Shown: positions 12,140-41,507, counted from the first letter of the stretch. The stretch: 64,000 nt of DNA from Chiloscyllium plagiosum (GCF_004010195.1 NC_057733.1:25214812-25278811); one strand, 5' to 3'. Notes: generated by a model not told the origin, from the letters alone. Program-made: numbers and translations.

Positions 12140-12212
12140 ATGGCCACTTACTGCTTTCCAAAACTTTTGTATATTATTGTGATTGTTTTTTGCCCATCCA
12201 CTATAACCAATA
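12140..12212 (+). CDS. Gene A exon: signal peptide (MATYCFPKLLYIIVIVFCPSTITN)
   Basis: Acceptor AACAG ending at 12115, ATG 24 nt into the exon, hydrophobic core, phase-1 donor GTAAGT at 12213. Confidence 0.8.
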
Positions 12213-12314
12213 GTAAGTATTCTTGGTGCATAATTTCTGCCATTTTTAGTATTTCACCAATATATGGTTTTACCATAAATTTTAAATGTTAACTGATATC
12301 CACATTTATTGCAG

Positions 12315-12638
12315 ATTCATTTATAACTTTGGATTGTAACAGTCCATTGACTGGAATACATAACCACCGCATTGTTTTGGTTTGTGAGTATAAGTCACAT
12401 TGGGAGAAAAATTGCAATATTAGCTGGAACTTCAATGTGAATTCTCATTCGACTGAAATCCTATGCACATCTGACAATGAAACGACTGGTCAGAAACAAA
12501 AAAGATGTGTTACAGATTACAAAAAGGTATCATTGATAATTGAGAAATCAGAAATTGTGGATGAAGGGAATTATCAGATTTTCATAAACTGTGGGCCAGG
12601 TGGCTACAAGTATAAAAACATCCAACTTTTCATTCATG
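12315..12638 (+). CDS. Gene A exon: B7-like IgV domain (atypical cysteine pattern)
   Basis: TTGCAG acceptor and GTAAGT donor, phase 1-1; VLVC, ISW, VSLII and DEGNY strand motifs. Confidence 0.88.
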
Positions 12639-13327
12639 GTAAGTAAAGAAAATCTATTTTTGGTCAACAAAACAGTACACATGATTACAATATTTAAAAG
12701 AAGACTTTTAAGATGAAAACTAATACAATTGCATCAGTAAAGAAACTATTTGCATTATTGGTCTATTCTGTGTCAATACAATCTCTTGTTCCTAAGTACT
12801 TGTGATTCATCACGGGTAACCATGCATTTACAGAATTGGCTGTAATACTGTCATCATATCATCAGCCAGAGTTCCTGCTACTTATTGTTGTCAACTGATA
12901 CTTTCTGAAAATGCACATAAGTAGGCATTGGATGAGGATGTGATTGAGCTTGGTATAATGTCTCAGTGGTTAAAGTTCCTGTCATCATTTACTTCCAGGA
13001 TTCACAAATGATAACTGCCACATTGGTTAAGGTATTTGAGAACTGCTGGCACACAATATCACCATGCTCCAGTATTAGTCACTGCTTTTATGTAAGGAGG
13101 GAAAATGTAATTGAAATGAATGATTTAAAGTTGCTCATTCAGTTTACTTAAGCAAGATTTCAAACTTGAATAATGGTATGAGTTTGGGCCAATTCAGTCG
13201 AAATAGAAGTATTGGAAAATTAATGTTTCTGACTCTAATTGGAAGATTGGTGTTGATTTTGTTTAATCCAGCTGTACAATCACAGGTTTGGAGACGAAAG
13301 TTGAAACTTGTAAAACATGTTTTTCAG

Positions 13328-13582
13328 CTCCATATACTGTTCTGCAAGTATCCAAAAGGATTGAAGGTGGTGAGAAAGGTCTCTCTTGTACTACACTTGG
13401 ATATCCATTGGCAAAACCCCACTGGGAAAATGAAAATGGCACTAACTTGGCAGCTAATTTGAGTGTAACACGAACAAAAGATAAGTTGTTCAACATCACT
13501 ACTTACATTCCAGTTAGTGGAGAACTATGCACCATAAACTATAGCTGCTCTTTATGCTATGAAAATTCATATATTTCTACAA
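13328..13582 (+). CDS. Gene A exon: B7-like IgC domain
   Basis: TTTTCAG acceptor, GTAAGT donor, phase 1-1; APY...LSC...GYP...W...KLFNIT...YSC as in PD-L1/B7-H3 C domains. Confidence 0.88.
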
Positions 13583-13716
13583 GTAAGTTTTATTTAATTT
13601 ACTTCCACTTGAAACAAAAGATTTTGCATGTTTCAGTTGTGTAAGTTGTCTAGTAGACATGTAGGAAAGAAAATATATGGACTGAGGGAAATCAAAATGC
13701 ACTAACAAACATTCAT

Positions 13717-14035
13717 GGCTGGCACGGTGGCACAGTGGTTAGCACTGCTGCCTCACAGCGCCAGAGACCCGGGTTCAATTCCCGCCTCAGGCAACTGTCT
13801 GTGTGGAGTTTGCACATTCTCCCTGTGTCTGCGTGGGATTCCTCCAGGTGCTCCGGTTTCCTCCCCTAGTCCAAAAATGTGCAGGTTAGGTGAATTGGCC
13901 GTGCTAAACTGCCCATAGTGCTAGGTGCAGGGGTAAATGTAAGGGAATGGGTATGGGTGGGTTGCTCTTCAGAGGGTTGGTGTGGACTTGTTGGGCCGAA
14001 GGGCCTGTTTCCACACTGTAAGAAATCTAAATCTA
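13717..14035 (+). mobile_element. HE1-type tRNA-derived SINE
   Basis: A box TGGCACAGTGG, B box GGTTCAATTCC, V-SINE body, CR1-like tail. Confidence 0.92.
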
Positions 14036-14049
14036 TATACAAACACTCC

Positions 14050-15850
14050 TATTAGGAGCAGGAGTGGTCCACTCAGATGCTTGAGATTGCTCCATTACCA
14101 ATAAGGTCTGCAACCCTGCCTATCACTGATAACTTTCCACCTCTTTGCTTAACAAGAATCTGTTGAACTCTGCCTTAAAAATATGCAAGGATTTTGCTTC
14201 CACCACTTTTTTTGCAAAGTGAGCTCCGAAGACTCACAACCTTCTGAAAAAAACCATCATGTCTTTGTTTTAATTGAGTGGCATCCTGACCTTGAAAAAG
14301 AGATCCCAAGTTCTATTTTTTTTTCCAGAAGAGCTAACATCCATATCTAAAGTGTCAAAACCTCTCAAATACTTCATGTTTAAATCAAGTTACTGAATTC
14401 CAGTGGATACAAGCCTAGGCTGTCCAACCTTTCCTTATAAGACCACTTGCTTTGTGTCACCAATAAATTTGGCAACCATACCTTCTGTCTCTTCATCTAA
14501 ATCATTTAGTTAAATTGTAAACATTTGAAGTCCTAGCACTGATCACTGTGAAATAACATTCATTATGTCTTATCAACCTGAAAAAGAATCATTTATGCCC
14601 ACTCTCTGCTTTCTGATAGCCAAACAATCTACTATTCATGTCAGTAAGCCAGTGTCAGTTTTCATTTTCCACAATACTCTTTGATATGGTATCTTATCAA
14701 ATCCCTTCTAGGATTTTAAATACAGTGCATCCATCAGTTCCCCTTTATCCACTACACATGTTACCTCCTTTGAGAACTCCAGAGGATTGGTTTTCACAAA
14801 ACAATGTTCACATTTGATTAACCTTAACTTGTACAAATGCCATGCACTGATTTCTTTAATAATAACTTCTAATATTTACCTTGTTTAAAATCTAACTGGT
14901 CTGCAGTTTCTTACTTTCTGTTTCTCTCCTTTTTTGAATAAGGGACTTATATTAACTATTCCTATCTAATGGGACTGTCCGAGAATCAAGGGAATTTTGG
15001 AAAATTAAAACTAACTTGTCAGTGATCACTCTAGCAACTCTTTATCAGACCAAGGATGAAGTGCATCTGCCCCAGGCACTTGTCAGCTCAGAGCTCCAAC
15101 AACTTATTCAGAATGGCTTCTCTGGTGATTGAGATTTTCTGGAATTCCTCCCTTTCTCCATTTCCTGATTAATCACTGCTTCTGAGATCTGACTTGTATC
15201 CTCTTCAGTAAGGACTGATGCAAATTACCCATTCGATTCATCTGCCATATCTTTATTTTTCATTAAAAATTCTTCAGTCTCACTTTCTATTTGAACAATG
15301 CTGACTCTGTTAACTCTTGTTAAATATTTTCTTTACATACGTACCGAAACTCTTATTCTTTGTTTGCATATTTATGGCTAGCTTTCTTTCATCATCTAAT
15401 TTATCCCACTTTAATATTCTTTTTTCATTCTTTGATTTTCTTTGTACTTTGTCCAACCTTCTGACCTATAAATTATCTTTACACAATTATATGCTTTCTC
15501 TTTCAATCTGATATTACCTTTAACATTTCTGATTAATCACTGATGGTGAGTTCAGCCCTTGAATTTTTGTTTACTCATTGGAATTTATTTATTCTGTGTA
15601 TCCTAAAATATCCTCTTAAATGTCTACCAGTATTGATTTGTCCTTTAACCTGATTTGCCAATTCACTTTAGCTGTCTGTCCTTTCATGCCCCATAATTGT
15701 AAGTTTTTTTAAACAATAAAAATTGTACCCACTCCACTTTTCCTCAAATCAAATATAAAATGTCATATTATAATTGTGGCTACCTGAGGACATATTTGCT
15801 ATCAGACTATTAATCAATCCTATCTCATTGCACAAAGCCAGAAAATGCTG
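14050..15850 (-). mobile_element. Old degenerate CR1 LINE
   Basis: Decayed similarity to the other CR1 copies along its length; boundaries approximate. Confidence 0.65.
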
Positions 15851-16251
15851 TTATAGAATCGCAGAACTCTTCAAATGCAGAAGGAAGCAAGTGGGCCGAC
15901 TGAGTCTGTTCCACCTGTCCAATAGGTATTATGACTTAGTGCCTTTCTCCTGCCTTTTTCTTTATACATTATCTTTATTTAAATAATTATCCACTGTCCC
16001 CTTGAATGTCTCAATTAACTTGCCTCTATCACATTTCCTTGCCATGCCTTCAATATCTGAACTACTCATGTGAAGAAGTTTAATTTATCATTAAATATGC
16101 CTTTCAAACTTGATCTTTTTCACAACCGTTCACAGTTTCTCTCTATCAACTCTATCCAGCCCCCTCATGATTTTGACAATTTCTATCTGGTCTCCTCTTA
16201 ACTTTCTACTGTTCAAGGAGAACAGTGCCAACCTCTGTTGGTGGAACTGCT

Positions 16252-16570
16252 GACACGGTGGCACAGTGGTTAGCACTGCTGCCTCACAGCGCCAGAGACC
16301 CGGGTTCAATTCCTGACTCAGGCGACTGACTGTGTGGAGTTTGCACGTTCTCCCCGTGTCTGCGTGGGTTTCCTCCGGGTGCTCCGGTTTCCTCCCACTG
16401 TCCAAAGATGTGCAGGTCAGGTGAATTGGCCATGCTAAATTGCCCGTAGTGTTAGGTAAGGGGTAAATGTAGGGTGGGTTGCGCTTCGGCGGGGCAGTGT
16501 GGACTTGTTGGGCCGAAGGGCCTGTTTCCACACAGTAAGAAATCTAATCTCTGTAATCTCTGTAATCTAT
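16252..16570 (+). mobile_element. HE1-type SINE nested in an old CR1 fragment
   Basis: A/B boxes, V-domain body, (AATCT)-type tail. Confidence 0.92.
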
Positions 16571-16744
16571 CACTGTTGCTGAAGTTTCGCATCTCTCGAA
16601 CTATTTTTGTAGTTCACTTCTGTACTCTCCAATGTGTTCACATCATTCCTAATATCCTAGATCCAGAACATTAGTTGAGGTCTAGTTGAGGTCCAGTTGA
16701 GGTCTAACAAGTTCAGCATCACCTCCATTCTCTTGTACTACAAA

Positions 16745-17205
16745 TAAGGACATGCAAGTTCTGGGCCTCCTCCATTAATAAGGACATGCAAGCCCTGTGC
16801 CACTGCCAAATCCAAGCCACTCGACAACTGAAGGAAGAATGCCTCATCTGCTGCCTTGGGACCCTTCAACCATATGGCATCAACATCAACTTCACCAAAT
16901 TCCACATCGCCCTTCCCCCCACCTCATTTCAAATGCAACCCTCCAACTTGGCACTGTCCTCTTGAACTGTCCTGCATATCCATCTTCCTTCCCAACTATC
17001 CGCTCCACACTCCCCACCGACCTACACAATTGCCCCCCACCTGAACTCACCTATCACCTTCCCAGCTACCTTCCACTCTCCCACCCCCATCCCCTATTTC
17101 TCTCTCAACCCCCTTCCCCCTCCACATTCCTGATGAAAGGCTTATGCCTGAAACATTGACTCTCCTGCTCCTCGGAAGCTGCCTGACCTGCTGCCACACT
17201 TTTTG
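16745..17205 (+). mobile_element. Penelope-like 3' fragment (GIY-YIG end plus decayed hammerhead)
   Basis: KDMQVLGLLH...LGTLQPYG coding remnant; CTGATGAAAGGCTTATGCCTGAAAC at 17130. Confidence 0.75.
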
Positions 17206-18245
17206 ATCCCTATTAATAAAGCTGAGGATACTGTATGTTTTACATACTGCTGTCCCTACCTGTCCTGTACCTTTGAAGATCTGTACCAATATCCATTTAG
17301 GTCATGCTGCTCCTGCACCCCCTTTAGAAATGCGTCTCTTATTTTAGCTGTCCATGTTCTTCCCGCCAAAATACATTGCCCCACTCTTCTCTGCATTGAA
17401 CTTTATCTTCCACCTGTCTGCTACTTCACCAATTTGTCTATGCCCTTTTGAAGTTCAACACTGATCTCCTCACAGTTTATAATTCTTCCATGTTTTGTAT
17501 TATCACAAACTTTGAAATTGTCCCTTGCACATTAAGATCTAGATATATATTAGGAAAAGAAATATTCCGATATTAACTATTGCGGAACCTCTAATACAAA
17601 TCTTCTTCCAGTGTGAAAAACATCCATTGACCATTATTCCCAGATTCTGATCACTCAACCAGTTTTGCATTCCCACTGCTACCAACCCTTTTATTCCATG
17701 AGCTACACCTTTTCTCACAAGTTTGTTGTGTGGTACATTATCAAATGTCTTTAGAAAGTGTTTGTATATGCCACATCAGCAGCATTACCCTCATTGACCC
17801 TTTCTATTACTTCCTTTAAAAACCCCCGCATGTGACTTAAACAACAAGTTCTCTAGAAGTTTATATCGGCCTTTCCTAATCAGCCCACGTTTTTCAGGTG
17901 ACTTCCAATTCTATTCTGAATAATTCTTTCGAGACACTTCCTCACTACTGAAGTTAAACTGGTCTATTTTTGTGGGTTTATCTTAATTTTTTTTTAGCAA
18001 AGTCATGATGTTTGCAATTCTCCAATTTCCTGGCACCACCCCAAGACCTGGAAGACTGAATGATTACGGTCAGTGCCCCTGCAATTTCCATTCTCACCTC
18101 CTTTGTAACCTTGCATATTATCTTAGGAAACCATTCCGAACATATTCTATGAACATCTTATCCAGGCTACTTTTGTCCATTTGAGTTTTCCATTCTCTCT
18201 GTAGATTAAATCTCCCATGGTTATCACAGTGCCCTTTTGACAAGC

Positions 18246-18462
18246 AAAAAGGAGAAAGTGAGGACTGCAGATGCTGGAGATCAGAGCTGAAAAATGTGTT
18301 GCTGGAAAAGCGCAGCAGGTCAGGCAGCATCCAAGGAGCAGGAGAATCGACGTTTCGGGCATAAGCCCTTCTTCAGGAAGGCTAATGCCCGAAACGTCGA
18401 TTCTCCTGCTCCTTGGATGCTGCCTGACCTGCTGCGCTTTTCCAGCAACACATTTTTCAGCA
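18246..18462. mobile_element. Penelope-derived fold-back element with perfect 77-bp inverted repeat
   Basis: Arms 18286-18362 and 18385-18461; near-perfect 13-bp TSD CCTT(T/C)TGACAAGC; hammerhead core on the minus strand at 18349-18377. Confidence 0.85.
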
Positions 18463-20589
18463 CCTTCTGACAAGCGCTCATTATTTCTTGTTTTATCCTC
18501 TCCCTCATAAATGTGGTTGCTGATGGATATTTAGATTTAGATTTAGACTTTATTGTTACATGCACTCAAGTACAGGAGCACAGTGAAAAGGTTTCAATGT
18601 GGCCACACACTGTGCCATCTTAGTACAAAAACCAAGGTAGAAAGAAATAAGGAACAAAGTTAAAAGTTAAACGTAACAGTCACCCTTATTATTGAAAAAA
18701 GTAAAATTTAAGTTAAACATTGCAGTCCTTCTTAGTATTAAATTGAAAAATAAATAAATAAAGCTAAGAATGCAACCATTGTAAGGGATCTGTATACCAC
18801 TTCCACAAGATTTTTGCCTTTTTAATTTCTCATTTCTACCCAAACTGTTTCCACATCACGTAGAGCACTATTTAACATTGCTTGTTTCTTCAAGGCAGAC
18901 AGCTGGAAAAAAATGTTAAAACTAATCTAAAGTAAGGAAATTCCAAGGTACTAGCTTCTCTGATGATTGAAGGCAGATAGTAAATGTTATAACAAATCAG
19001 CATCTCTTTAAATTAATAGCTATAACTTTTAATTGAGATATTATTATTGGCTGCAGAAGGTAATATAGCAATGAGCAAGTACAGCAAGGGAATAAACTCC
19101 TGAGTTTTAAGTGAATGCATTTCATTGAGATGGAACACAAAACATAGTGCTTTGGTATAAATATATATTCTGTATTTAGTGTGGAACTTCCCAATATGTT
19201 ACTGGCTGGAGAAAGTTGGGTAATGTTCAAGTCCCAGGCATTAACAGCTTTCACCATGAGCAGCACAAAAAATTCAAACTCCACTTTCCCTAACTGATTC
19301 AGAAATCCCCTTGGTAGAGATTTTGTTTATAAAGCCAAGTACATGCCAAAATGAATTATTTTTCATGCGCACTAATTTCATTTTCATTGGATCTACACCA
19401 CCCAGCCTGATTTTTGTTTTTCTGTAGTTGGAACCAGTGTCAGTTAATAGTGTCAGAAAAATGATTACCATTATATAGATTTATTAATAAAAGCATTAAT
19501 CACTGTCATTTTGTAAATGTGATGCTTTTTAAAAAATGTATGGAATCATTTTCTGTACTCCTGAAGCTCTTAAGAAAGTTGCTTAGATCACTGTCCTAAA
19601 TTTCTGAGCGATTCAATATGGCAAGAAACTCAACTCCCTCAAATCCGGTGACTTAAGTCTCGGACTAAGCGAGATTAGAAACTCAACAATATGGCCAAGG
19701 TGATGGAAGGCTCAATGGCTCTTGATCTGATGTGAGCATGTATAGAGCAGACTGCTCAGAGTGGACATTAATGGCTAGTGATGTCAATGGAGAAAAGAAC
19801 AGGGTCCCAGCTTGGAGCTAGAGCTATTTTAAAGAGGTGTCTATTACAATGCAGAGTAGAGCCAGAAGCTCTCAGCTGCTAAGATGGAGTTTGAGATCAG
19901 TTAACGTCATTATTAACTTAAAACTGCATTTGATTGCCATGTGACATGCAGGTTACAGGAAATTACACAGTCAGTTTTTAAAATTATATTTGCAATCTCT
20001 CAGCAATAGTGAACCCAGCATCTAATGGGATACTAATTTGTTACTAAGCAATACTTCGTCCCCTGACAAAGCACAACATGAATCAAACTGAACCAATACC
20101 AACATCAAAATGTCTTTCTTCTCTGCTTATTAAAATATGGAGTATCTGTTGCATAAGTTAGACTACAAGAATTTTTCTATATTTAAGACCTTAGTAAATT
20201 AGTAAATAATTTCTGCTTCTTATTAGCAGATTCAGACAACAAGCTCTTGTCCTGACTCAGCATGTTTGGCTGCCAGGTGGACATGCTGCTAACATTCAAT
20301 AACTTCCTGTCATTTGTTTTCCTGTTTCCTGTGTCTGAATACTTCTTGTTGATTGAATGCCACTTATGACAATGTGGCCAACAGCAACATCTAGTCATAT
20401 GGCAGAAATTCCAAAATGGAATTAGTTGTAGTCAGCACTTAATGCAATTAACTCAGGGCATTTAAACTCACAATTTAATATAATTTGCTCCATTCTGATC
20501 TCAATGACTGGTGTTTGAATTAAAGCTTTAGGAGTGCATGATATAAATTCGGTAATCAAAAGATCTCAATCATGCATGTCTGATTTCAG

Positions 20590-20741
20590 GATTGGAGTGT
20601 CCCAACAATGAAACATTCTCTCAGTCAAAGGAAGAAAAGATCAGAACAATTTTTGGTATTCATTTATCTCTGGGATTAATCATAGTCCTTTTAATACTTT
20701 TGGCACTTCTGGTGGCGTTTTCATCAAGCAAATTCGTCAAG
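20590..20741 (+). CDS. Gene A exon: stalk and transmembrane segment
   Basis: TTTCAG acceptor, phase 1 in frame with the IgC exon; RLECPNNETFSQSKEEKIRTIFGIHLSLGLIIVLLILLALLVAFSSSKFVK; donor AAG|GTATTA. Confidence 0.8.
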
Positions 20742-21023
20742 GTATTATATCCATTTTGTTCATGGTAAAAGCAGAATTGTTGCTGCTTAAGATTCTGTTT
20801 TCCTTCACCAATTTTAATTCAATGTTTAAATACATTACGCTAATGTTTGAAAACCAGGGTCGGAATAAGTTACTCTGCTGGCCATTCCAAATTCCCTCTT
20901 GCCCCCAACCAGCCGGTAATTTTTGGGTGGGTTGGGTGTCTCAGTGGGAGGGTGGTTGGTTTGATGGCAGGCAAAACCTAGACCACATCAGGGTTGTTGC
21001 TAGCCTGTCCATAGAGGAGGTTA

Positions 21024-22786: not shown

Positions 22787-22855
22787 CATTCATACGAGCG
22801 AAAAGAATCAGCGTCACCTAATTTAATAGATAAGCAACTCTTTCTGGATATATAA
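22787..22855 (+). CDS. Gene A terminal exon: cytoplasmic tail HSYERKESASPNLIDKQLFLDI
   Basis: Pyrimidine tract plus weak AAG acceptor, phase 0 matching the TM exon; AU-rich 3' UTR with AATAAA at 23231-23236. Confidence 0.55.
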   Translation, partial: HSYERKESASPNLIDKQLFLDI

Positions 22856-24806
22856 GCTGAAATAAGAAGGACGGCCTTACCTTTTACGAACAAACTTTAT
22901 TTCCAACGGATAATGCAGACTGAAGACGGCCTGGAATGACATTGATCTTATTAATCAATTTTCTACTAAATGCAATTTCTGTGAAAACATTGTATCAAAT
23001 GATGTTAAAAAAACACTTCGTAGAAATTTACCTGTTTCTAAAAGGTATGCAAGAATAATCATGAAAAATATGAAAATAATTTTCCATATGACCACTGAGA
23101 AAAATTGTTATAATCACAATACAGTTATAACTACATTTAATGAAAACCACTGTCCTTGTTATTTGCATGGTTAGATTTCTTGGAATTGTAGTCGACTTTT
23201 CATGACAAAAATAGTTGTGATGATTCATAAAATAAAACGTTTTGCAATAATCCGACACCATGTTCAGAAGTTTTTAGTTATAAATTCAGATTAAGTACTT
23301 TTCATTCCCAGCAAACTGGAGTGGAAGTTTTTCTGTTAGTGTTTCATTGCAAATGTCAGTGTCCAACGGATATCTTGGAATCTTGGAATTTAATGGTTCT
23401 AAACTTCTGATCTGTGTAGGAATCCCTATTTCTGACCCAGATCAGACAAAATTTTGCCTCACTATAAAAAATATATCTTTCTACTTTTCTGCATTTTTGG
23501 TTGTGAACTGAAGTGATAAAATGGCTGTTTTAAAAACCAAGGATGTGGAAGGGATCATGGCAAATTTTGAAAGGAAGTTACTGAAACACATTCTCAGTGG
23601 TATTTACATTGCTGCTTTGTTTCAGCAGTGGAGGAAGCAGAGAGGCTGGCACCAGGGAATGTGTACACATAAGATTCAGTCAGCAACAAGTAGCTGATTG
23701 GTTCGAGAAGTTCTGACCAGCTCTGGATGATAAAGGCCTTCTGCCAGCCAATGACTCTACTCGTTAAATCTCAAAGCCCCTTATAAAAGTTATCATTGGC
23801 TTCTGGGTAGCCGAACTAGGTTTGGGTATGAACAACATTGCCAGAGATCTTCAGGTCATCTGGAAGAGGAGGTGGTTTGTCTGTCTGCAGGAGAACATAT
23901 TTGAAACCTGAAGAAAGAGAGTTTATTTTCCCTCACCAGTTGCTGTAAACTGTTGCTTTTAACCAGTAAACTTTATAATTTATGAACAGGTCTCTCCATT
24001 CCGTTCACAAAGAAGTGAATAATATCTGATGAAGAAAAATTGAAGAACAGCAAATCCTGCCCAGCAATTGGATCATCTTAATACATCCTGTGGATGCAGG
24101 CTATTGAACACCCCACACCCATGACACCAATTTTTTTTGACTGTCTGTATGTGAATGTTGAGATACTTTTGTAAGGGGGTTCAAGTTTTAACTATTAGAG
24201 TTATATGTCAGCAGTTCATTGTTGCATACCTGTGTCAAGTCTTTTTTTTAAATAAACAGTCATTCATATTAAATATAGAATCCTGGTCCATATTTTCTGT
24301 TTGCCTGGTTCTAGAGAGACAGATAAATGGGAATTTTGCATACTTACTTTGATGAAATGTTTAATTTTTGCAATGTTTTTGGGAATAATGAGGCTGGATT
24401 TCCAGTGTGTTACTCCAGTATGTCATGACATACCAACATCCAGAAGAGTTTTCAGGACAGAATTTGAGACAAGAGCCTTCCCAGCTGAAGCGATGCAGAC
24501 CAGTCCAGTTCAGCAAATCCACACAGGCAGCAGCAGAGTGGATCAGCACTGAATCAGCGCCTTTTTTTTCAGCAGTAATTGCTATATTCTGTGGTTTGAA
24601 GTGCCTAAAGCCAGTTTGACTACTGAGGGAAGGTAAATTTTTACAATAAGCGAGGGGTTTGGGTGTTGGTGTGTAACTGTGAGTGGTGCAGCTGGCATGT
24701 GGTTAGAGGAATAATATTATAGGTTGTGGGTACTACCAGTACCAGATGGGTAGGAGTAGGGTCTGAGATGGCTGAGGCATGCAGTGCAGTGGTGGGTGGT
24801 TTTTTT

Positions 24807-31385: not shown

Positions 31386-31573
31386 CAACATTTACATAAA
31401 GATCAAGTGTTTAAGCAATACAAACATATCTGATGTGATTTTTAATTTTAACAATTTTGAATTCCAGTTAAAACCTAACTCTTTAAACAAAGGATAGTAA
31501 AGCGTAGAGTGGATTAGAGTGTTACTGATTTGTTTGGATTGTCCTTAGGTTAACTGGAACTCAATCTGGGGAA

Positions 31574-31637
31574 ATGGTTTCATACTCTACAATAAGACTC
31601 CTTCCTGTCATCTTATGCAACATACCATCTGTATTTG
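31574..31637 (+). CDS. Gene B exon: signal peptide (MVSYSTIRLLPVILCNIPSVF)
   Basis: CCTTAG acceptor ending at 31548, ATG 25 nt into the exon, phase-1 GTAAGT donor, 93-nt intron to the V exon. Confidence 0.8.
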
Positions 31638-31730
31638 GTAAGTACCGAGCTGCTTCTTAATATGTAGCTCCATTGAATATTGATTCTCACTGACGTATGA
31701 TGAGTGAATGAAAATTATTCTTTTTTTCAG

Positions 31731-32057
31731 ATTTTGTGATATTAAATTGTCAGTCTTCAGTGACAGGAATATTTAATGAAGATACCAAACTACCATGCAC
31801 ATTGAATTCAGATTCAAGTATCAATTCAGCACACATTGAACTTTGGAAAAAGGAAAATGATGGAAAAGAAAAAATTGTGTTTAACTTCACAAAAAATGTC
31901 AGTGAAGTTCAGGGTCGGATTAAATTACTTCACCCAGGATCTCAAGACATCTCACTGGTGATCCAGAACACACAGGTGTCAGATAATGGGACATATCAAT
32001 ATTTTTTGGAGACAGCTATTGGTCACAGATTGCATGAGATTAAATTGAATGTCAAAG
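31731..32057 (+). CDS. Gene B exon: B7-like IgV domain lacking the F-strand Cys
   Basis: T-tract CAG acceptor, GTAGGT donor, phase 1-1; VTGIFNEDTKLPC...GRIKL...DISLVIQNTQVSDNGTYQY. Confidence 0.92.
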
Positions 32058-34429: not shown

Positions 34430-34690
34430 GGGCAGCCCAGTGGCTCAATGGTTAGCACTGCTACCTCTAAAGCACCAGGGACCTGGTTTCAATTCCAGTG
34501 TCAGGTGACTGTGTGGAGTTTCCACAATCACCCCCTGCCTGCATAGGTTTCTACCAGGTGCTCTGGCTTTCTCCTACAGTCCAAGGACATGCAGGTTTGG
34601 TGGATTGGCCATGGGAAATTCAGGGTTACAGGGATTGAGTTGGTGTGGACTTGTTGGGCTGAATGGCCTGTTTTCACATTTCAAATTCTT
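34430..34690 (+). mobile_element. HE1-type SINE (degenerate)
   Basis: GTGGCTCAATGGTTAGCAC head. Confidence 0.75.
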
Positions 34691-35720
34691 AAAAGAAATT
34701 CTAACAATTTTGTCAGGCATAATCTCTCTTGACAAAGCTGTTCTGACTCAGCCTTATTTTACTGTGCATTTCCAAGATTACTCTGTAATCTCATCCTTCA
34801 TAATGAACTCTTACTAACAATGGTGCTCAGACTATCTGGCATTTGGTTTTCTGTCTTCAGTCTCCTTCCCTTCCTAAACAGGGGTGTTACCATTTTCCAG
34901 TCCTCAGGGACACTCCCTGACTCCAGTGATTCCTGAAAATCTCTACCAATACCTCCACAATCTCTCCTAGTATCTCCATCAGTACTCTGGGGTGTAGTTC
35001 ATCTGGTCTGAGTGATTTATCCACCTTCAGATCTTTTAGCTTCCCCAGCGCCTTCTCCTTTGTCATGGCCTCATATCTGTCTCCTGGTGTGCTATAATGT
35101 ATTCCATCTCAAAGACAACACTTTTGATGCTGAACATTCCTACACAGCAGCATTGAAATGCCAGATGCATTGTCGAAGGAAGAAACTGCCTCCAGTTCAA
35201 AACTGACTCCTATTGAGACAAGCTAATACTATATCTTGTTTCAGTTAGCAGAGTGACAACCAGTCTTTCAGTAAAATGATGTAATACAGCAAAATAGTCA
35301 TGTGGAAATTAATGCTTTTTACTCTAATAATTATGGCTTGAATGAATAATTGATTTGTCTCTTTTTAAAAATATTCCAAATTTTGTGCATGTATGCATTA
35401 CCAGTTAATTGATTGTAAATTTTCCGATTACTAAAAATCGTGTAAGTAAGCTACATTATCAGTGCAAATCTGTCATGATTTCCAGCAATATAAGATTCAG
35501 ATGTGCTGTAGCAAAATATGCAAATTATATAGACCAACTACTTCTAAATCAGACGGAAATGATAAAAAGAAAAGGACAGCAGAACCTAAAGCTTCCTCAA
35601 AGGTTTCAATGAACATAGTTAGAAATGAGTTCAAAACAGCAAATTGGCAACATTAATTATTTTCCTTAATTCTACATATCTTAACCTAAGATAACCTAAA
35701 TCTATCAAGATCTTTGTCTT

Positions 35721-36020
35721 AGGTGGCACAGTGGTTAACACTATTTCCTCACAGTGCAAGGAACCTGGGTTTGTTTCCAGCCTGCGGCAATTGTGTGGAG
35801 TTTACAAACTTTTCCTGTATCTCTGTGGATTTCCTCCGGGTTCTCCAGTTTCCTCCCACAGGCCAAAGATGTGCAGGTTAGGTAGACTGGCCATGGAAAA
35901 TGCGGGGTTACAGGGACAGGGTAGCAGGGTAGGTCTGGATGGGTTGGTATGGACTTGATAGGCCAAATAGGCTATCAAGAATCCTTACACTGCTTCCACA
36001 GTGTAAGGATTCTATGGTAC
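35721..36020 (+). mobile_element. HE1-type SINE (degenerate)
   Basis: GGTGGCACAGTGGTTAACAC head and V-domain body. Confidence 0.8.
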
Positions 36021-36153
36021 TGTAATACCCCTAGAAGTGATCGTTTTTACCAAGTACAACTGGGTTTTTCTTGCTTAAAGGGGAAAGAGGAGCAAAATTG
36101 CTCATTATGCTACACCTCCCGATCGTTATATTAACAATTGTGTTTTTACTTAG

Positions 36154-36450
36154 CTCCATATAGTTTGCCAAAAATGGCCTTACTCCAAAATATCACAAGA
36201 AGAATAAGAAGTGCCGACCTTATTTGTGAAACAACTGGATATCCACTCGCTCAGATTCACTGGTTTGTTTATGAGAAAAGGAATCTCACAGCCAGAGCTA
36301 AAACTCATAGTGTTCTGACTCCAGAAGGGCTGTTCAGTGTCACCAGTACACTTCACATCGAAGCCATGGAAAATGCCTTAGAAGGCAATTATACGTGTGC
36401 TGTGTTCAATTTCAAAAAAAATGATATTGAGGTGCGGAACCAATTTCCAA
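36154..36450 (+). CDS. Gene B exon: B7-like IgC domain (B7-H3/PD-L1-like)
   Basis: TTAG acceptor, GTAAGT donor, phase 1-1; APYSLPKM...LIC...GYPLAQIHW...EGLFSVTSTL...NYTCAVFN. Confidence 0.92.
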
Positions 36451-36717
36451 GTAAGTTAATAGCATTTGCTGAAACAATTATGAGTAAATGTATGTTCTAA
36501 AGCATTGATTTTGTCCCTCCCTTTCCTGAAAACATAGGCAATGCTACAGGATCATGTTTACTACACATGAACACTTATCTTAGTTTAAGACTGCTGCAAT
36601 TCCTTTCCTCAACACTGTTCACTCTTGAAACCTGTTGATAAAAAGTATGATTATTATGTGTTTAAGGACTGAAGCTGGAATTTAGAATTGAATTACAATT
36701 TTCCCCTAAATTTTCAG

Positions 36718-36864
36718 TTCCAATTATAGACACACCTACTACAAATCGGCAAAGTGAAAGGAAAAAATCTAAAATTCTCACAGCTGTCTTTGTCATTGTT
36801 GGAGCACTGGCAACTGGAATAATAATTTTGGCAATTCATCGATTCAGGAAGACCATCTATTCAG
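36718..36864 (+). CDS. Gene B exon: stalk, transmembrane segment and start of tail
   Basis: TTTTCAG acceptor; ILTAVFVIVGALATGIIILAI followed by HRFRKTIYS; phase-1 donor CAG|GTATGA. Confidence 0.88.
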
Positions 36865-37044
36865 GTATGATGGTAATATAAATGTTTCCAGTATCTGCAG
36901 AAACTCTTCAGGCTTTACAAATGAACAGAAGAGGTTGATTATCAAGCCTCCTTTGTTATTCAATTAACTTGAGCCTTAACTCCATTTTCCAAACTACTGC
37001 CCACATCCAATGAAGAGACCAAAAATCCAACCCTCTTAAATACA

Positions 37045-37920
37045 GGAACATAAAACATAGAAAATTGGTGCAGGAGTAGGCCATTCAGCCCTTCAAGCCT
37101 GCTCGACCATTCAATATGACCAACGGTTGATCATGCAATCTCAGTATCCTCTTCCCAATTTCTGTCCATATTCCTTGATTCTTTTAGCTGCAAGGGCCAA
37201 GTCCAGCTCCCTCTTGAATATTTCTTATGTATTGGCCCAACAGCTTCATGTGGGAATGAATTCTGCAGGCCCACAACCCCCTGAGTGAAGAAATCCTTCC
37301 TGACTCAGTCCTGAATGGCTTATCCCTTATTTTTAGACTGTGACCCCTAGTTCTGGACTTCCCTGTAATGGAGAACTGTCTTCCCACATCTAGCATGTCC
37401 AGTCCCTTCAAGATTTTATATGTTCCGATGAGATCCCCCCTCATTCTGCTAAAATTGCAGCAATTACAAGCCCAGTCGACCTAGTCTTTCCTCATATGTC
37501 AGTCCTGCCATCCCAAGAATCAGTCTGGTAAACCGTAATCCACTATGAAACATTCAGAATACTCGGGGCGAAGAGCTCCTAATGTTTGCAACACTTTGGG
37601 TGAAGACATTTATCCTTCATCTCACTCCTAATCCCCTGCAACTGTAACTCCCTGTTCTAAACTCCCCAGCTATCAGAAACAATCCTGTCAAGCCCCTTCT
37701 CAATCATGCTTTTATTAATGAGATCACCTCTCATTCTTCTACACTTCAGAGAATGTGGACACAATTTACTCAGCTTCTCACTCTTGGCAGCCATCTCATC
37801 CTAGGTTCCAATCTAATTAGTTTTCATGATAATGCTAGCAATGTAAGTATATCCTACAATAGATTTGGAGAACTAATTGCACATGGTATTCCAGGTGTGG
37901 TCGAACTTAAACCCAATTTG
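37045..37920 (-). mobile_element. CR1 LINE 3' fragments
   Basis: MRGDLIGTYKILKGLD motif. Confidence 0.8.
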
Positions 37921-37997
37921 AATGGCGTCAAATACTGGCTGTCTTTCTAAATGCATTATATGACATGGATAAATTCTTAGTTAAATTACTGCTAGTG

Positions 37998-39771
37998 ATG
38001 TCGTACAGCATGAAAACAGACCCTTCAGTCCAACCCGTCCATGTCGACCAGATATCCCAACCCAATCTAGTCCCACCTGCCAGCACCCGGCCTATATCCC
38101 TCCAAACCCTTCCTATTCATATGCACATCTAAATGCCTCTTAAATGTTGCAATTGTACCAGCTCCACCACATCCTCTGGCAGCTCATTCCATACATGTAC
38201 TATCCTCTGCGTGAAAACACTGCCCCTTAGGTCTCTTTTATATCTTTCCCCTCTCACCCTAAACCTATGCCCTCTAGTTCTGGACTCTCCGACTCCAGGG
38301 AAAAGACTTTGTCTATTTATCCTATCCATGCCCCTCATAATTTTGTAAACCTCTATAAGCCTCCGACTCTCCAGGGAAAACAGCCCCAGCCTGTTCAGCC
38401 TATCCGTGAAGCTCAGATCCTCCAACCCTGGCAACATCCTTGTAAATCTTTTCTGAATCCGTTCAAGTTTCAGAACATCTTTCCGATAGGAAGGAGACCA
38501 GAATTGCACGCAATATTCCAACAATGTCCTGTACACCGCAACATGACTTCCCAACTTCTGTACTCAATACTCTGACCAATAAAGGAAAGCATACCAAACG
38601 CTTTCTTCACTATCTACCTGTGACTCCACTTTCAAGGAGCTATGAACCTGCACTCCAAGGTCTCTTTGTTCAGCAACACTCCCCAGGACCTTACCATTTA
38701 CAAGAATCCAGAGAAGGTATATTCCTGTCAGGGTGAAAGGGAAGGCTGGTAGGTATAGAGAATGCTGGATGACTAAAGAAATTGAGGGTTTGGTTAAGAA
38801 AAAGAATGAAGCATATGTCAGGTATAGACTGGATAGATCGAGTGAATCCTTAGAAGAGTATAAAGAAAGTAGGAGTATACTTAAGAGGGAAATAAGGAGG
38901 GCAAAATGGAAACATGAGATAGCTTTGGCAAATAGAATTAAGGAGAATCCAAAGGGTTTTTAAAAACATATTAAGGACAAAAGGGTAACTAGGGAGAGAA
39001 TAGGGCCCCTCAAAGATCAGCAAGGCGGCCTTTGTGTGGAGCCACAGAAAATGGGGGAGATACTAAATGAATATTTTGCATCAGTATTTACTGTGGAAAA
39101 GGATATGGAAGATATAGACTGTAGGGAAATAGATGGTGACATCTTGCAAAATGACCAGATTACAGAGGAGGAAGTNNNNNNNNNNNNNNNNNNNNNNNNN
39201 NNNNNNNNNNNNNNNNNNNNNNNNNNNNNNNNNNNNNNNNNNNNNNNNNNNNNNNNNNNNNNNNNNNNNNNNNNNNNNNNNNNNNNNNNNNNNNNNNNNN
39301 NNNNNNNNNNNNNNNNNNNNNNNNNNNNNNNNNNNNNNNNNNNNNNNNNNNNNNNNNNNNNNNNNNNNNNNNNNNNNNNNNNNNNNNNNNNNNNNNNNNN
39401 NNNNNNNNNNNNNNNNNNNNNNNNNNNNNNNNNNNNNNNNNNNNNNNNNNNNNNNNNNNNNNNNNNNNNNNNNNNNNNNNNNNNNNNNNNNNNNNNNNNN
39501 NNNNNNNNNNNNNNNNNNNNNNNNNNNNNNNNNTTTTGTCATTTACATGAATGATTTGGATGTGTGCATAAGAGGTGCAGTTAGTAAGTTTGCAGATGAC
39601 ACCAAAATTGGAGGTGTAGTGGACAGCGAAGAGGGTTACCTCAGGTTACAACAGGATCTGGACCAGATGGGCCAATGAGCTGAGAGGTGGCAGATGGTGT
39701 TTAATTCAGATAAATGCGAGGTGCTGCATTTTGGGAAAGCAAATCTTAACAGGACTTATACGCTTAATGGT
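37998..39771. mobile_element. CR1/HER1 LINE with inverted 5' segment (minus 37998-38698, plus 38700-39771)
   Basis: Opposite-orientation ORF2 segments that abut in element coordinates at AATGGT. Confidence 0.8.
39176..39533. other. Assembly gap (358 N)
   Basis: Run of N. Confidence 1.
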
Positions 39772-41380
39772 CATTCAGGTATGACAACAATAACATGACA
39801 TTTGCACATGTGAAACAGATAGAAGACTGAAGCTGTGAATTTTACCAATTTTGTCACAAACTTCAAATGTGGTTGCATTGTAGTAAAAACAGAAGTTCAG
39901 AGAAAGCCAGAAGATCTGAGACAATTTGTGGAGAGAGAAGCAGAGTTAACATTTTAAATCCAAAATGACTTATTCAGAACAAAAACTAGCTGGAAAATGA
40001 TAGTTGTTATGCTGCTGACAGAGGGGAAGAAGGAGCTAATGGAACACATGGTCAGCTTGTCCAGAGCAAAAGACAAAGCAACCTCTAATAGTCGTAAAGA
40101 AGAGATAGAGATGTAAAATGGGAATAAATGGAGAAAATAGGTCTGCTGTGTTGAAAGATAAGTCAGTAAGAAGCAAGTAAGGTGTGCCTAGAGGAAAGTG
40201 GAGGGACTATAATCAAAATGGAGGACAGAGGATATCAATATTGAGTCGAAGAAGCTGAAAAGTACCTCGGTGGAAAATGAGGGATATTCCCCCACCTCCT
40301 TTGGAACATTGTAACAAAGACAGGACAGAAATATTAGCATGGAATGATGGGAGAATATGAGCACCTGTCTCCAGAGATGCTGCGAGACCCACTGAGTTTC
40401 TGCAATACTTTCTGTTTGTTTTTTATTTCAGATTTACAGCATCTTGATACAGTATTTTGCTTTTATTACTTACATTGTAGATGATTAAAGTTGCTCGGTG
40501 AAAATTGTTTGCTAATGTGCCTGTATGAATCAATCTTCACTTGCCACCCTGTCCCACCTAGAAAGTACAGGAAAGCTCCAGGTAAATCAGATAGAACTCC
40601 TCTGAAAACATATGCAGCCAAATAAGCCTGAAAGTCAGCAGTGACAATCCACACTACATTCTCTTAACTTGAATGTTTTGTTCAGGGGAAAGCAGATCAG
40701 GAAGGATGGAAACATTATTTATATAAAATCTGGAGCATTAAAGTAATTCATTCTCTTGCTCTGGTTGCCACTGGCTAAATTGACATTTATTATCCACTCT
40801 TGGCTGCCCTGGGAAGATGTTGATGGGCCCTCTTTGCATTCTGACATGACTGACTGGCCTACTGGACTAATTCAGAGTTCAGTTGAGAATCAGCCACATG
40901 TTGGGCAGGTAAGTTACGGACTGTAGGTTGACCTTCCTAAAAGAGGATTGCTGAACTGATTAGGTTCCTGAGCAATGGCCTAAAATTAACCAAAACCCTT
41001 ACTGATACCAACCATTTTTAATGTTGAATTCAATCTCACGCTATTAAATTGGGAATTGAACTCATGTCCTCAGGGTTACTATTTCAGCAATTTGAGTGAA
41101 TAATTTATTATAGCCGCTACCATATCATACACAGCTAGGTCAAGTTCCAGAACTAAAAATATATGTGGCAGATGGGTGAAAATACTTGTTTTAAATACTT
41201 TGTCTTACCTTTTTTTAATTTTGAACAATGTATTAGGATTACATGTTCATTGTGGAAGCTATGTGCATCGATTATAACTGTCAATAATATCATGAATCAA
41301 GTGGAAATTTCCACACAATTCTTATTATAATTAGTATTACAGAAATAAAAAAATGACTTTGCTTTTTAATTTTGTTTCAG

Positions 41381-41409
41381 CAGTGAGAAGAGAATCTGAA
41401 ATGCCAATG
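41381..41409 (+). CDS. Gene B cytoplasmic mini-exon (AVRRESEMPM)
   Basis: Strong pyrimidine tract with CAGCAG acceptor, phase 1 in, GTAGGT donor phase 0; completes TIYSAV. Confidence 0.68.
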
Positions 41410-41492
41410 GTAGGTGTGATTTCAAACATTAGTTTAGTTTTGAAGGTTTTCTTTTACTGGTTTCATCATTTTCTTTTTCTTTCTTTTATCAG

Positions 41493-41507
41493 ATACTACA
41501 TGAATAA
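41493..41507 (+). CDS. Gene B terminal coding exon (ILHE stop) followed by 3' UTR
   Basis: Long pyrimidine tract plus CAG, 83-nt intron; AATAAA at 42404-42409 and 42424-42429. Confidence 0.62.
   Translation: MLHE

What the first reader, a model, noticed from the sequence alone, without database searches (positions are those of the whole stretch)
12140..41507. Tandem pair of divergent B7-family-like genes whose V domains both lack the canonical F-strand cysteine
Seen: two complete same-strand genes (about 290 and 292 aa) with matching layout: ATG 24-25 nt into the leader exon, a 93-102 nt leader/V intron, and phase-1 V and C exons. The DxGxYxC motif reads DEGNYQI in gene A and DNGTYQY in gene B, while both keep an A-strand Cys (TLDC, ILNC) and the B-strand Cys. 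Established: the B-F disulfide is near-universal in B7 V domains, and APY/GYP/LF.V.S C-domain motifs typify PD-L1 and B7-H3. Inference: an old duplicated, possibly cartilaginous-fish-specific immune co-signalling subfamily that uses an alternative A-B disulfide. From memory, the N-terminal FVx[VL]xC and YTC[AV]VFN patterns resemble uncharacterised teleost B7-like proteins (zgc:174863 type); this is unverified.
Basis: partly seen in the sequence, partly recalled or inferred. Interest (0 to 1): 0.85.

Follow-up and report, generated by a model that had tools for sequence, protein, structure and literature searches.

The report
Shark B7-like genes missing canonical cysteine
Two neighbouring, expressed immune-ligand genes of the bamboo shark belong to an old, unstudied fish family whose outer antibody-like domain always has an extra early cysteine and often lacks one of the two cysteines that normally pin this fold.

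Summary
The window is Chiloscyllium plagiosum. It holds two same-strand IgV-IgC-TM genes. Gene A (12140-22855) matches RefSeq "CD276 antigen homolog", 290 aa. Gene B (31574-41507) matches "CD276 antigen", 292/291 aa. Every exon translation is found letter for letter in these proteins. Spliced contigs show gene A's first two coding introns in 3 of 4 runs. The N gap lies in a LINE copy inside gene B's fourth intron and removes no coding sequence.

Both V domains keep an A-strand and a B-strand Cys. Ile (A) or Tyr (B) stands at the F-strand position.
- The genes are B7-like; the nearest solved relatives are CD276 and PD-L1.
- The A/B duplication predates the shark-ray split.
- The family is not cartilaginous-fish-specific. 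It includes teleost zgc:174863, polypterid, bowfin and coelacanth proteins.

In 48 aligned members the A and B cysteines are invariant, and the F cysteine is present in only 9. This pattern and the predicted strand register favour an A-B cross-strand disulfide. No coordinates were available, so the bond remains an inference. I found no description of this cysteine pattern in the papers searched.

The parts
12116..12212 (+). Gene A leader exon (CDS from ATG 12140; phase 1 at its end)
   Evidence: Sequence read. Contigs start at 12114/12115 and join 12212>12315 in 3 of 4 runs. The translation is found in P0157.
12315..12638 (+). Gene A IgV exon with six Cys. A-strand Cys 12335-12337, B-strand Cys 12383-12385, Ile at the F-strand position 12578-12580, Cys four residues later 12590-12592.
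   Evidence: Pfam V-set 25.6 bits, just under the cut-off of 26. Spliced contigs. 100% match to P0157.
13328..13582 (+). Gene A IgC exon (APY...GYPLA...YSC)
   Evidence: C2-set_3 22.2 bits, below the cut-off of 27. Best solved match PD-L2, E 1.4e-4. Joint 12637>13327 in 3 of 4 runs.
20590..20741 (+). Gene A stalk and transmembrane exon (RLEC...; ends in phase 0)
   Evidence: The translation is found in P0157 at residues 219-268.
22787..22855 (+). Gene A terminal coding exon as used in RefSeq isoform X2 (HSYERKES...LDI, stop)
   Evidence: C-terminus of P0157.
23629..23697 (+). Alternative gene A terminal exon (WRKQRGW...SS, stop), behind a CAGCAG acceptor
   Evidence: Corresponds to the C-terminus of the C. 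punctatum orthologue P0149. Not in P0157.
31549..31637 (+). Gene B leader exon (CDS from ATG 31574). The 5' border is predicted from an AG at 31547-31548.
   Evidence: The translation is found in P0164. No reads were laid on this gene.
31731..32057 (+). Gene B IgV exon with only two Cys. A-strand Cys 31748-31750, B-strand Cys 31796-31798, Tyr (TAT) at the F-strand position 32000-32002.
   Evidence: V-set 43.1 bits, cut-off 26. 100% match to P0164.
36154..36450 (+). Gene B IgC exon (APY...GYPLAQIHW...YTCAVFN)
   Evidence: Ig_3 33.9 bits, cut-off 30. Best solved matches CD276, PD-L2, PD-L1.
36718..36864 (+). Gene B stalk and transmembrane exon
   Evidence: Found in P0164. Helix 238-283 in the model.
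38646..39675 (+). LINE reverse-transcriptase remnant in gene B intron 4. It holds the assembly gap 39176-39533.
41381..41409 (+). Gene B cytoplasmic exon ((A)VRRESEMPM). NAGNAG acceptor; the second start is at 41384.
   Evidence: Isoforms P0164 (292 aa...YSAVRR...) and P0136 (291 aa...YSVRR...).
41493..41507 (+). Gene B last coding exon (ILHE, stop)

Best explanation
Gene A and gene B are intact paralogous type I membrane glycoproteins (signal peptide, IgV, IgC, transmembrane helix, short tail). Gene A is shown here to be transcribed and spliced. Both belong to an unnamed branch of the B7 family. The teleost members of this branch are called zgc:174863. The branch is nearest to CD276 and PD-L1/PD-L2 but is orthologous to neither.

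Shown:
- The exon structure, and splicing of gene A.
- Orthologues of A and of B in sharks and rays.
- Relatives in ray-finned fish and coelacanth.
- A B7/butyrophilin-like predicted fold.
- Invariance of the A-strand and B-strand cysteines, with frequent absence of the F-strand cysteine.

Inferred:
- The V domain is pinned by a disulfide between the A-strand Cys and the B-strand Cys. These are predicted to lie opposite each other on neighbouring antiparallel strands of one sheet. This bond would replace the usual B-F bond between the two sheets. It would explain why the F-strand Cys could be lost repeatedly while A and B never were.
- By analogy with B7 ligands, the proteins sit on antigen-presenting or myeloid cells and engage an unknown IgSF receptor on lymphocytes through the V domain.
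For: Identity and structure:
- All gene B exon translations and the first four of gene A are found in RefSeq proteins of C. plagiosum.
- Spliced contigs cover gene A.

B7 kinship:
- Gene B's C exon hits CD276 (E 6.7e-15), PD-L2 (2.2e-7) and PD-L1 (about 1e-4).
- A profile of 48 family members scores 101 bits on a single CD276 V-C unit, 100 on PD-L1, 83 on PD-L2, 76 on BTN1A1, 62 on CD80 and 55 on CD86.
- The two AlphaFold models have mean pLDDT 82.8 each.
- The gene B model superposes on B7-H3 (TM 0.72, rmsd 3.7 A), PD-L1 (0.77, 3.4), B7-H6 (0.76) and BTN1A1 (0.74). The gene A model superposes on PD-L1 (0.71) and BTN3A1 (0.74).

Family:
- The profile search gave 122 hits.
- Careful tree: elasmobranch clade 100/99, bony-fish clade 100/99, clade A (sharks plus the ray Hemitrygon) 100/99, clade B (three rays plus sharks) 96/88.

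Cysteines:
- A-Cys 48 of 48 and B-Cys 48 of 48. At the F position: Cys 9, Tyr 27, Ile 8, Phe 2, Leu 1, Trp 1.
- At least 3 changes of F-Cys state on the tree.
- I counted domains of the 122 representatives that have a B-Cys and residues aligned at both other positions (66 domains). The F-Cys is absent in 27 of 44 with an A-Cys, against 3 of 22 without one; those 3 are all in one caecilian protein. Fisher p = 2.4e-4, but the domains are not phylogenetically independent.

Strand register:
- DSSP strands are 25-28 and 44-47 in gene B, and 28-32 and 44-52 in gene A.
- The outer strand ends sum to the same number as the two cysteines (25+47 = 28+44; 28+52 = 32+48).

Cell type:
- Zebrafish zgc:174863 (290 aa) is listed as enriched in microglia/macrophages and without a human or mouse orthologue (PMC7720500, passages).
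Against: - No coordinates were returned, so the Cys-Cys distance was not measured. There is no chemical evidence for any disulfide.
- Nine of 48 members keep all three cysteines. Seven of those nine have exactly three Cys in the V domain. There the usual B-F bond could form, and the A-Cys would be free. Its invariance therefore need not mean pairing with B.
- Gene A's V domain has six cysteines, so other pairings are possible.
- Strand ends in a DSSP string are only indirect evidence of register.
- I could not fetch a bona fide shark CD276 or PD-L1. Non-orthology rests on low similarity (22-24% identity to human B7-H3; 45.7 bits), on the shared A-Cys, and on a paper's statement about zebrafish.
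- The tissue and cell type of the shark transcripts are unknown. The runs are coded, and their RNA label is a guess, although the contigs are spliced.
- Function and receptor are pure analogy.
Confidence: 0.6

Rival explanations
1. The V domains have no intradomain disulfide at all. The A- and B-strand cysteines are buried free thiols, as in disulfide-less V domains such as those of the CD2/SLAM family (recalled), and the fold is held by packing alone.
For: - The canonical pin is gone in 39 of 48 members.
- The canonical C-strand Trp is also absent or shifted in about half of them: W in 19 rows at one column and 3 at the next, of 48. The core is therefore remodelled anyway.
- Pfam's 2B4 receptor V model gives a weak hit to gene A's V exon, E 0.032.
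Against: - Two free cysteines that stay invariant in 48 of 48 proteins across cartilaginous and bony fish are unusual for extracellular domains.
- F-Cys loss is nearly confined to domains that have the A-Cys.
Confidence: 0.22
2. Gene B is simply the shark orthologue of CD276 (B7-H3), as RefSeq names it. Gene A would be a diverged tandem copy, and the cysteine change a lineage quirk of a characterised gene.
For: - RefSeq names: 'CD276 antigen' and 'CD276 antigen homolog'.
- CD276 is the top solved hit by sequence.
- A paper states that CD276 is present in all gnathostomes (PMC13262535, passages).
Against: - PD-L1 scores the same as a single CD276 unit (100.6 against 101.7 bits).
- Identity to human B7-H3 is only 22-24%, although that paper calls CD276 far more conserved than its relatives.
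- Automatic names for orthologues of the same genes vary: CD276, PD-L1-like, PD-L2-like, BTN1A1-like, L1.1-like, uncharacterized.
- The elasmobranch genes share the invariant A-Cys with zgc:174863-type proteins. In the alignments to CD276 the A-strand part of the profile is not matched at all (they start at profile position 31).
- Zebrafish zgc:174863 is listed as lacking a human or mouse orthologue.
Confidence: 0.1
3. The A-strand Cys makes an intermolecular bond, either a covalent homodimer or a bond to a partner chain, and does not pair with the B-strand Cys.
For: - It lies only about seven residues from the start of the V exon.
- Members with A, B and F cysteines mostly have three Cys in the V domain (7 of 9), which would leave one thiol unpaired.
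Against: - In both models it is inside a beta strand of the A-B region with high confidence. The 10-residue blocks around it have pLDDT 85-98 in gene B and 71-97 in gene A.
- In gene B-type proteins this would leave the B-strand Cys unpaired in the core.
Confidence: 0.06
4. One or both genes are decaying copies without function.
For: - Gene A's Ig exons score just under Pfam cut-offs.
- Gene B's tail is shorter than in other sharks.
Against: - The reading frames are intact and the splice sites canonical.
- Orthologues exist in many sharks and rays.
- Gene A is spliced in 3 of 4 runs.
Confidence: 0.02

Closest known systems
CD276 (B7-H3)
   Same: IgV-IgC unit, APY hinge, GYP motif in the C domain, type I membrane protein. 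It is the best sequence match among solved structures and a good superposition (TM 0.72, rmsd 3.7 A).
   Different: Only 22-24% identity. CD276 keeps the F-strand Cys (SFTCFV in the alignment). The A-strand part of the family profile, which holds the extra Cys, is not matched in the alignments, which start at profile position 31.
PD-L1 / PD-L2 (CD274, PDCD1LG2)
   Same: - Equal profile score to CD276.
- GYPLA, TPEGL and C-x-V-F/W-N motifs of the C domain resemble PD-L2.
- The first mature residue Phe aligns with PD-L1 F19.
- Best superposition: TM 0.77, rmsd 3.4 A.
   Different: - The A-strand Cys aligns with a Pro of PD-L1.
- The residue aligned with PD-L1 D122 is Lys in the family profile. 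By my extension of that alignment it is Arg in gene B and Lys in gene A. The paper PMC12151841 (passages) calls D122 well conserved in fish PD-L1.
- The F-strand Cys is absent.
Teleost zgc:174863 and 'CD276 antigen-like' proteins of bichir, reedfish, bowfin, eels and coelacanth
   Same: - Same length class and V-C-TM layout.
- Same invariant A- and B-strand Cys.
- They form the sister clade of the elasmobranch genes in my tree.
- Otophysan, Chanos and coelacanth members also lack the F-strand Cys.
   Different: - 19-28% identity to gene B.
- Percomorph, eel, bowfin and some polypterid members keep the F-strand Cys.
- No function is known. I found one bioinformatic paper that lists the zebrafish gene.
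Ig domains with an intra-sheet instead of inter-sheet disulfide: CD4 domain 2, Siglec V-set domains (recalled, from no call)
   Same: These are precedents that an Ig fold can carry its disulfide within one sheet.
   Different: As I recall, the strands involved differ (C-F in CD4 D2, B-E in Siglecs). I recall no natural V domain with an A-B bond. None of this was tested here.

Membership tests
B7 family (IgV-IgC membrane ligands of the CD276/PD-L group) | Leader, IgV, IgC and TM each on its own exon, with phase-1 Ig exons | tested here: met
   Exon borders. Joints. Pfam V-set and C2-set/Ig_3.
B7 family (IgV-IgC membrane ligands of the CD276/PD-L group) | Significant sequence similarity to characterised B7 members | tested here: met
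   P0164 against PDB: CD276 single unit 5.1e-11, PD-L1 5.1e-10, PD-L2 4.1e-8, CD86 1.8e-4, CD80 1.3e-3. Family profile 55-101 bits.
B7 family (IgV-IgC membrane ligands of the CD276/PD-L group) | B7/butyrophilin-like two-domain fold | tested here: met
   Foldseek TM 0.72-0.78 at rmsd 3.4-4.0 A to B7-H3, PD-L1, B7-H6 and BTN1A1. Antibody light chains reach only about 0.44.
B7 family (IgV-IgC membrane ligands of the CD276/PD-L group) | Canonical B-F disulfide in the IgV domain | tested here: not met
   Ile (gene A) or Tyr (gene B) stands at the F-strand position. This is a structural norm of the family rather than a criterion of descent.
B7 family (IgV-IgC membrane ligands of the CD276/PD-L group) | Binds a CD28-family or other IgSF receptor on lymphocytes | not testable with these tools
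   Needs binding assays.
CD276 orthologue (RefSeq name of gene B) | Clear one-to-one similarity above other B7 members | tested here: not met
   A single CD276 unit scores 101.7 bits against 100.6 for PD-L1. Identity is 22-24%.
CD276 orthologue (RefSeq name of gene B) | Conserved synteny, and no other CD276 gene in the genome | not tested
The window holds no other non-repeat gene that I could recognise.
PD-L1/PD-L2 | PD-1-contact residues F19 and D122 (named in PMC12151841) | tested here: not met
   F19 aligns with the family's Phe. D122 aligns with Lys in the profile; by my extension it is Arg in gene B and Lys in gene A.
zgc:174863-type fish B7-like family (unnamed) | V-C-TM protein of about 280-320 aa with a Cys 16 residues before the B-strand Cys | tested here: met
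   48 of 48 aligned members, genes A and B included.
zgc:174863-type fish B7-like family (unnamed) | Monophyly with the bony-fish members to the exclusion of canonical B7 genes | tested here: inconclusive
   The tree has no canonical B7 outgroup, so it shows two sister clades only. Among about-300-aa hits of the profile search, the bony-fish proteins with the A-Cys come directly after the elasmobranch ones.

The most novel reading that the evidence does not exclude
An entire B7-like lineage, conserved since before the split of cartilaginous and bony fish, holds its IgV domain together with a disulfide between neighbouring A and B strands of one sheet, in place of the B-F bond between the sheets. 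This made the canonical F-strand cysteine dispensable, so it was lost at least three times. Cross-strand disulfides of this geometry are often strained and redox-labile (recalled). The bond could therefore double as a redox switch on an immune ligand.
Probability: 0.4. Interest if true: 0.75.

Novelty: new variant of a known kind. Interest (0 to 1): 0.58.

Why it matters
The B-F disulfide and the C-strand Trp are treated as the near-invariant core of Ig V domains. A family that replaced this pin, and kept the replacement in sharks, rays, ray-finned fish and coelacanth, would be a natural experiment in how the fold can be stabilised. It can be tested directly: gene B's V domain has only two cysteines.

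It also matters for annotation. The genes carry automatic names (CD276, PD-L1-like, PD-L2-like, butyrophilin-like) that suggest orthology with human checkpoint ligands, and the evidence does not support that. Comparative studies of B7-H3 and PD-L evolution could therefore be misled.

The family is an orphan co-signalling candidate. One bioinformatic paper lists its zebrafish member as enriched in microglia/macrophages.

Tried and rejected
- Other Ig exons in the window: tblastn of the seven exon translations found only the A-B pairs (V 27% identity, E 4e-5; C 33-34%, E about 8e-7). No third V or C exon appeared; the next best hit had E 0.14.
- Neighbouring genes for synteny: ORFs of 85 aa or more on both strands look like LINE/SINE debris.
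- Cys-Cys distance: structure prediction returned no coordinates, and no model files appeared in /data.
- A bona fide CD276 as outgroup: short CD276 motifs found no convincing candidate among the 182 proteins fetched.
- ESM Atlas gave only generic IgSF clusters: butyrophilin, OX-2, CD80.
- Teleost CD80/86 as identity of the family: the flounder paper (passages) prints no protein sequence. As I read its primers, the ends of the protein differ from turbot P0180. This stays unresolved.
- Literature:
  - B7 family + cartilaginous fish + shark gave 6 papers.
  - zgc:174863 gave 0, then 1,795 irrelevant number matches, then 4 papers (3 listed).
  - B7 family + teleost + CD80 + B7-H3 + phylogenetic gave 2 papers.
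  - B7 family + IgV + canonical cysteine + fish gave 5 papers (4 listed).
  - The C. plagiosum search listed only human B7-H3 papers.
  - In the passages I read, none describes this cysteine pattern.
  - PMC3709836 (Flajnik 2012, B7 evolution) is not held. I know it only from reference lists.
  - The supplements of PMC12151841, which list the shark PD-L1 sequences, are closed. I cannot exclude that a gene of this cluster was used there.
Exons were searched one by one. Where a full-length protein was needed I used RefSeq proteins that the tools returned (P0136, P0149, P0157, P0164).

Full report
**What is in the window.**

From the sequence I read the exon borders.
- Gene A: leader CDS 12140-12212, V 12315-12638, C 13328-13582, stalk/TM 20590-20741, terminal exon 22787-22855. 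A second possible terminal exon lies at 23629-23697.
- Gene B: leader CDS 31574-31637, V 31731-32057, C 36154-36450, stalk/TM 36718-36864, 41381-41409 (second acceptor at 41384), 41493-41507.
- The leader/V introns are 102 and 93 nt. The V and C exons are phase 1-1. The coding sums are 870 and 876 nt, that is 290 and 292 codons.

They were searched one by one, and full-length work used database proteins returned by the tools.

**Whose genes they are.** A profile of the two V exons (alignment A1) was searched against 1.84 billion representatives and gave 122 hits. Follow-up searches with two hits and cluster look-ups show that the window is Chiloscyllium plagiosum.
- Gene A is XP_043570547.1, 'CD276 antigen homolog isoform X2' (P0157, 290 aa).
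- Gene B is XP_043570548.1/549.1, 'CD276 antigen isoform X1/X2' (P0164, 292 aa; P0136, 291 aa).
- The next accession, XP_043570550.1, 'PD-L2-like' (P0004), is on the same 56-Mb record.

All six gene B exon translations and the first four of gene A occur unchanged in these proteins. The translation of 23629-23694 is not in P0157. It matches the C-terminus of the C. punctatum orthologue P0149 instead.

**Transcription.** Sixteen runs hold part of 12100-13700. Four runs that are guessed to be RNA hold 20-30% of its words, close to the exon share of the stretch. Laid on 12000-13800, their contigs cover the exons only, with no mismatches. They join 12212>12315 (GT..AG) in 3 of 4 runs and 12637>13327 in 3 of 4 runs.

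One contig carries 161 further letters upstream of 12114. The ATG exon is therefore preceded by a non-coding exon outside the laid stretch. Its splicing rests on the RefSeq model and on conservation.

**The assembly gap.** The gap lies between gene B's TM exon and its first cytoplasmic exon.
- The ORF on its right (39535-39675) is 81% identical over 47 aa to the ORF at 27034-27378(-), which hits RVT_1.
- The ORF on its left (38964-39173) is 74% identical over 66 aa to the same other copy.

Both sides therefore belong to one kind of LINE in + orientation, in different frames. Whether the letters are continuous cannot be known, and the gap length is only an estimate. No coding sequence of gene B is missing, since 292 codons are accounted for outside it. 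I looked up no letters for the gap.

**Kinship with B7.**
- Pfam finds V-set in both V exons: B 43.1 bits, A 25.6 bits, cut-off 26. It finds Ig_3, C2-set_3 and C2-set_2 in the C exons.
- Among solved structures, the C exons hit CD276, PD-L2 and PD-L1.
- The V exons are odd. Gene B's best hit is sodium-channel beta-2 (E 5e-6), and gene A has none better than E 0.21.
- Full-length P0164 and P0149 hit CD276, PD-L1 and PD-L2 first.
- A 48-member family profile scores a single CD276 unit at 101.7 bits, PD-L1 at 100.6, PD-L2 at 83, BTN1A1 at 76, CD80 at 62 and CD86 at 55.
- The AlphaFold2 models of both proteins (pLDDT 82.8) superpose best on PD-L1, B7-H3, B7-H6 and butyrophilins. TM scores are 0.71-0.78 at 3.4-4.1 A, against about 0.44 for antibody light chains.

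The genes are therefore B7-family members near the CD276/PD-L group. They are not close to any single one: identity to human B7-H3 is 22-24%. In the profile alignment, PD-L1's PD-1 contact D122 is matched by Lys, and the family's extra Cys by a Pro of PD-L1.

**The family and its age.** A and B are 25% (V) and 35% (C) identical.
- Gene A orthologues were found in Heptranchias, Heterodontus, Carcharodon, Cetorhinus, Mustelus, two Scyliorhinus species, C. punctatum and Hemiscyllium.
- Gene B-type proteins were found in those groups and also in Pristiophorus, Stegostoma, Rhincodon, Pristis, Hypanus and Rhinoraja.
- Bony-fish relatives include 'zgc:174863' of Chanos and Centropristis. Others are proteins of Astyanax, Pangasianodon, Hoplias, Mastacembelus, Scophthalmus, eels, Amia, Polypterus, Erpetoichthys and Latimeria.

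A careful maximum-likelihood tree was built from 48 full-length rows. I left out isoforms, fragments, V-only and multi-domain models. It gives:
- an elasmobranch clade (100/99) and a bony-fish clade (100/99);
- within elasmobranchs, clade A (sharks plus the ray Hemitrygon, 100/99) and clade B (three rays plus sharks, 96/88);
- the third C. plagiosum gene as an orectolobiform-specific copy of B.

The A/B duplication is thus older than the shark-ray split. The tree has no canonical B7 outgroup and its root is not inferred.

**The cysteines.** In the 48-row alignment the invariant columns include the A-strand Cys and the B-strand Cys. They are as conserved as the DxGxY Gly and Tyr and the C-domain Trp and Cys.

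At the F-strand position there is Cys in 9 rows, Tyr in 27, Ile in 8, Phe in 2, Leu in 1 and Trp in 1. All 32 elasmobranch rows lack the Cys. The nine with Cys are percomorphs, an eel, bowfin and two polypterid proteins. The state changes at least three times on the tree.

I also counted domains of the 122 cluster representatives that have a B-Cys and residues aligned at both other positions (66 domains). The F-Cys is absent in 27 of 44 with an A-Cys, against 3 of 22 without one; those 3 are all in one caecilian protein. These counts are not phylogenetically independent.

Gene B-type V domains have just two cysteines. Gene A-type domains have six, including one four residues after the F position.

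**How it most likely works.** The pair that never varies is A-B, and the one that varies is F. The simplest reading is that A-B is the conserved bond.
- The two residues are 16 apart. By recalled antibody numbering, that is the spacing of VH residues 6 and 22, which face each other across the A and B strands.
- In both models the DSSP strands fit that register: 25-28 with 44-47, and 28-32 with 44-52.

I could not measure the distance, so this step is inference.

Against it, the nine members with all three cysteines could make the ordinary bond and leave the A-Cys free. The rest of the mechanism is analogy: a B7-like ligand on antigen-presenting or myeloid cells that engages an IgSF receptor. 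The only support is a paper that lists zebrafish zgc:174863 as enriched in microglia/macrophages and lacking a mammalian orthologue (PMC7720500, passages).

**Known or new.** The genes are annotated in RefSeq, so the loci are not new. The family has no name of its own, and the automatic names disagree between species. My literature searches found no description of the cysteine pattern in the passages I read.
- Kondo et al. 2025 (PMC12151841, passages) report a shark PD-L1. The sequences are in a closed supplement, so overlap with this cluster cannot be excluded.
- Flajnik et al. 2025 (PMC12227049; abstract and sections 6 and 15 read) describe a shark antigen-receptor complex of IgM, IgW, IgNAR and TCR genes.
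- Unchecked scan notes place a further PD-L-like gene among IgM clusters and a TCR V 44 kb beyond this window. That is a lead which I could not test.

**Verdict.** This is a new variant of a known kind, of moderate to good interest, and directly testable.

Noticed in passing
window 12000-12116, and upstream of 12000: One spliced contig (run X2, record 7) has 161 letters before the leader exon that do not lie on 12000-12113. Gene A therefore has an upstream non-coding exon that I did not locate.
   Followed up: no
window 41379-41384 and 23624-23629: There are tandem CAGCAG acceptors. At gene B's cytoplasmic exon they explain RefSeq isoforms of 292 and 291 aa. The same arrangement precedes the alternative last exon of gene A.
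   Followed up: partly
window 22787-22855 versus 23629-23697: Gene A has two candidate terminal exons of 22 codons each. C. plagiosum RefSeq X2 uses the first. The C. punctatum orthologue P0149 ends with the equivalent of the second.
   Followed up: partly
window 13708-13800; similar ORFs at 22259-22513, 34320-34505, 35695-35955 (+) and 24822-25193 (-): A short interspersed repeat (peptide-like ...AQWLALLPH...) reaches summed contig depths of 2-6 x 10^5 in the four runs. It is very abundant in transcripts or in the genome.
   Followed up: no
proteins P0009, P0125, P0150 (other sharks): Gene A orthologues have annotated isoforms that lack one Ig domain. P0009 and P0150 go from the V domain straight to the stalk/TM exon (V-TM, 193-202 aa). 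P0125 keeps the C domain and only a short N-terminal piece of V.
   Followed up: no
cytoplasmic tails of B-type proteins; window 41381-41507: Many B-type tails share R-R-[EQD]-S-x-x-P-M and end in A/T-D-V/I. Gene B of C. plagiosum keeps VRRESEMPM but ends early with ILHE.
   Followed up: no
alignment A3, column of the C-strand Trp; window about 31907-31909: The canonical C-strand Trp is present in only 19 of 48 rows at one column and 3 at the next, gene B among these. Most B-type sharks read I-E-L-S-K there, so the V-domain core is remodelled beyond the cysteine.
   Followed up: partly
window 20593-20601 (stalk of gene A): A membrane-proximal Cys (R-L-E-C) recurs in most gene A orthologues that I fetched. 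It could make a covalent dimer. Gene A then has an odd number of ectodomain cysteines.
   Followed up: no
beyond the window's end (scan notes s1-886327 and s1-885876): Scan notes report further B7-like genes 7.7 kb and 43.9 kb past the window, the second 'among IgM clusters and a TCR V'. I did not check its position.
   Followed up: partly
protein P0034 (Rhinatrema bivittatum, caecilian): This protein has three V domains with Trp at the F-strand position and no Cys at the family's A-strand position, but other N-terminal cysteines. It is the only tetrapod hit that lacks the F-Cys, and its kinship is unclear.
   Followed up: no
window 30570-31100: A simple-repeat tract, read as H-T-H-T/S-H-T peptides on the - strand, lies 0.5-1 kb upstream of gene B's leader exon.
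   Followed up: no
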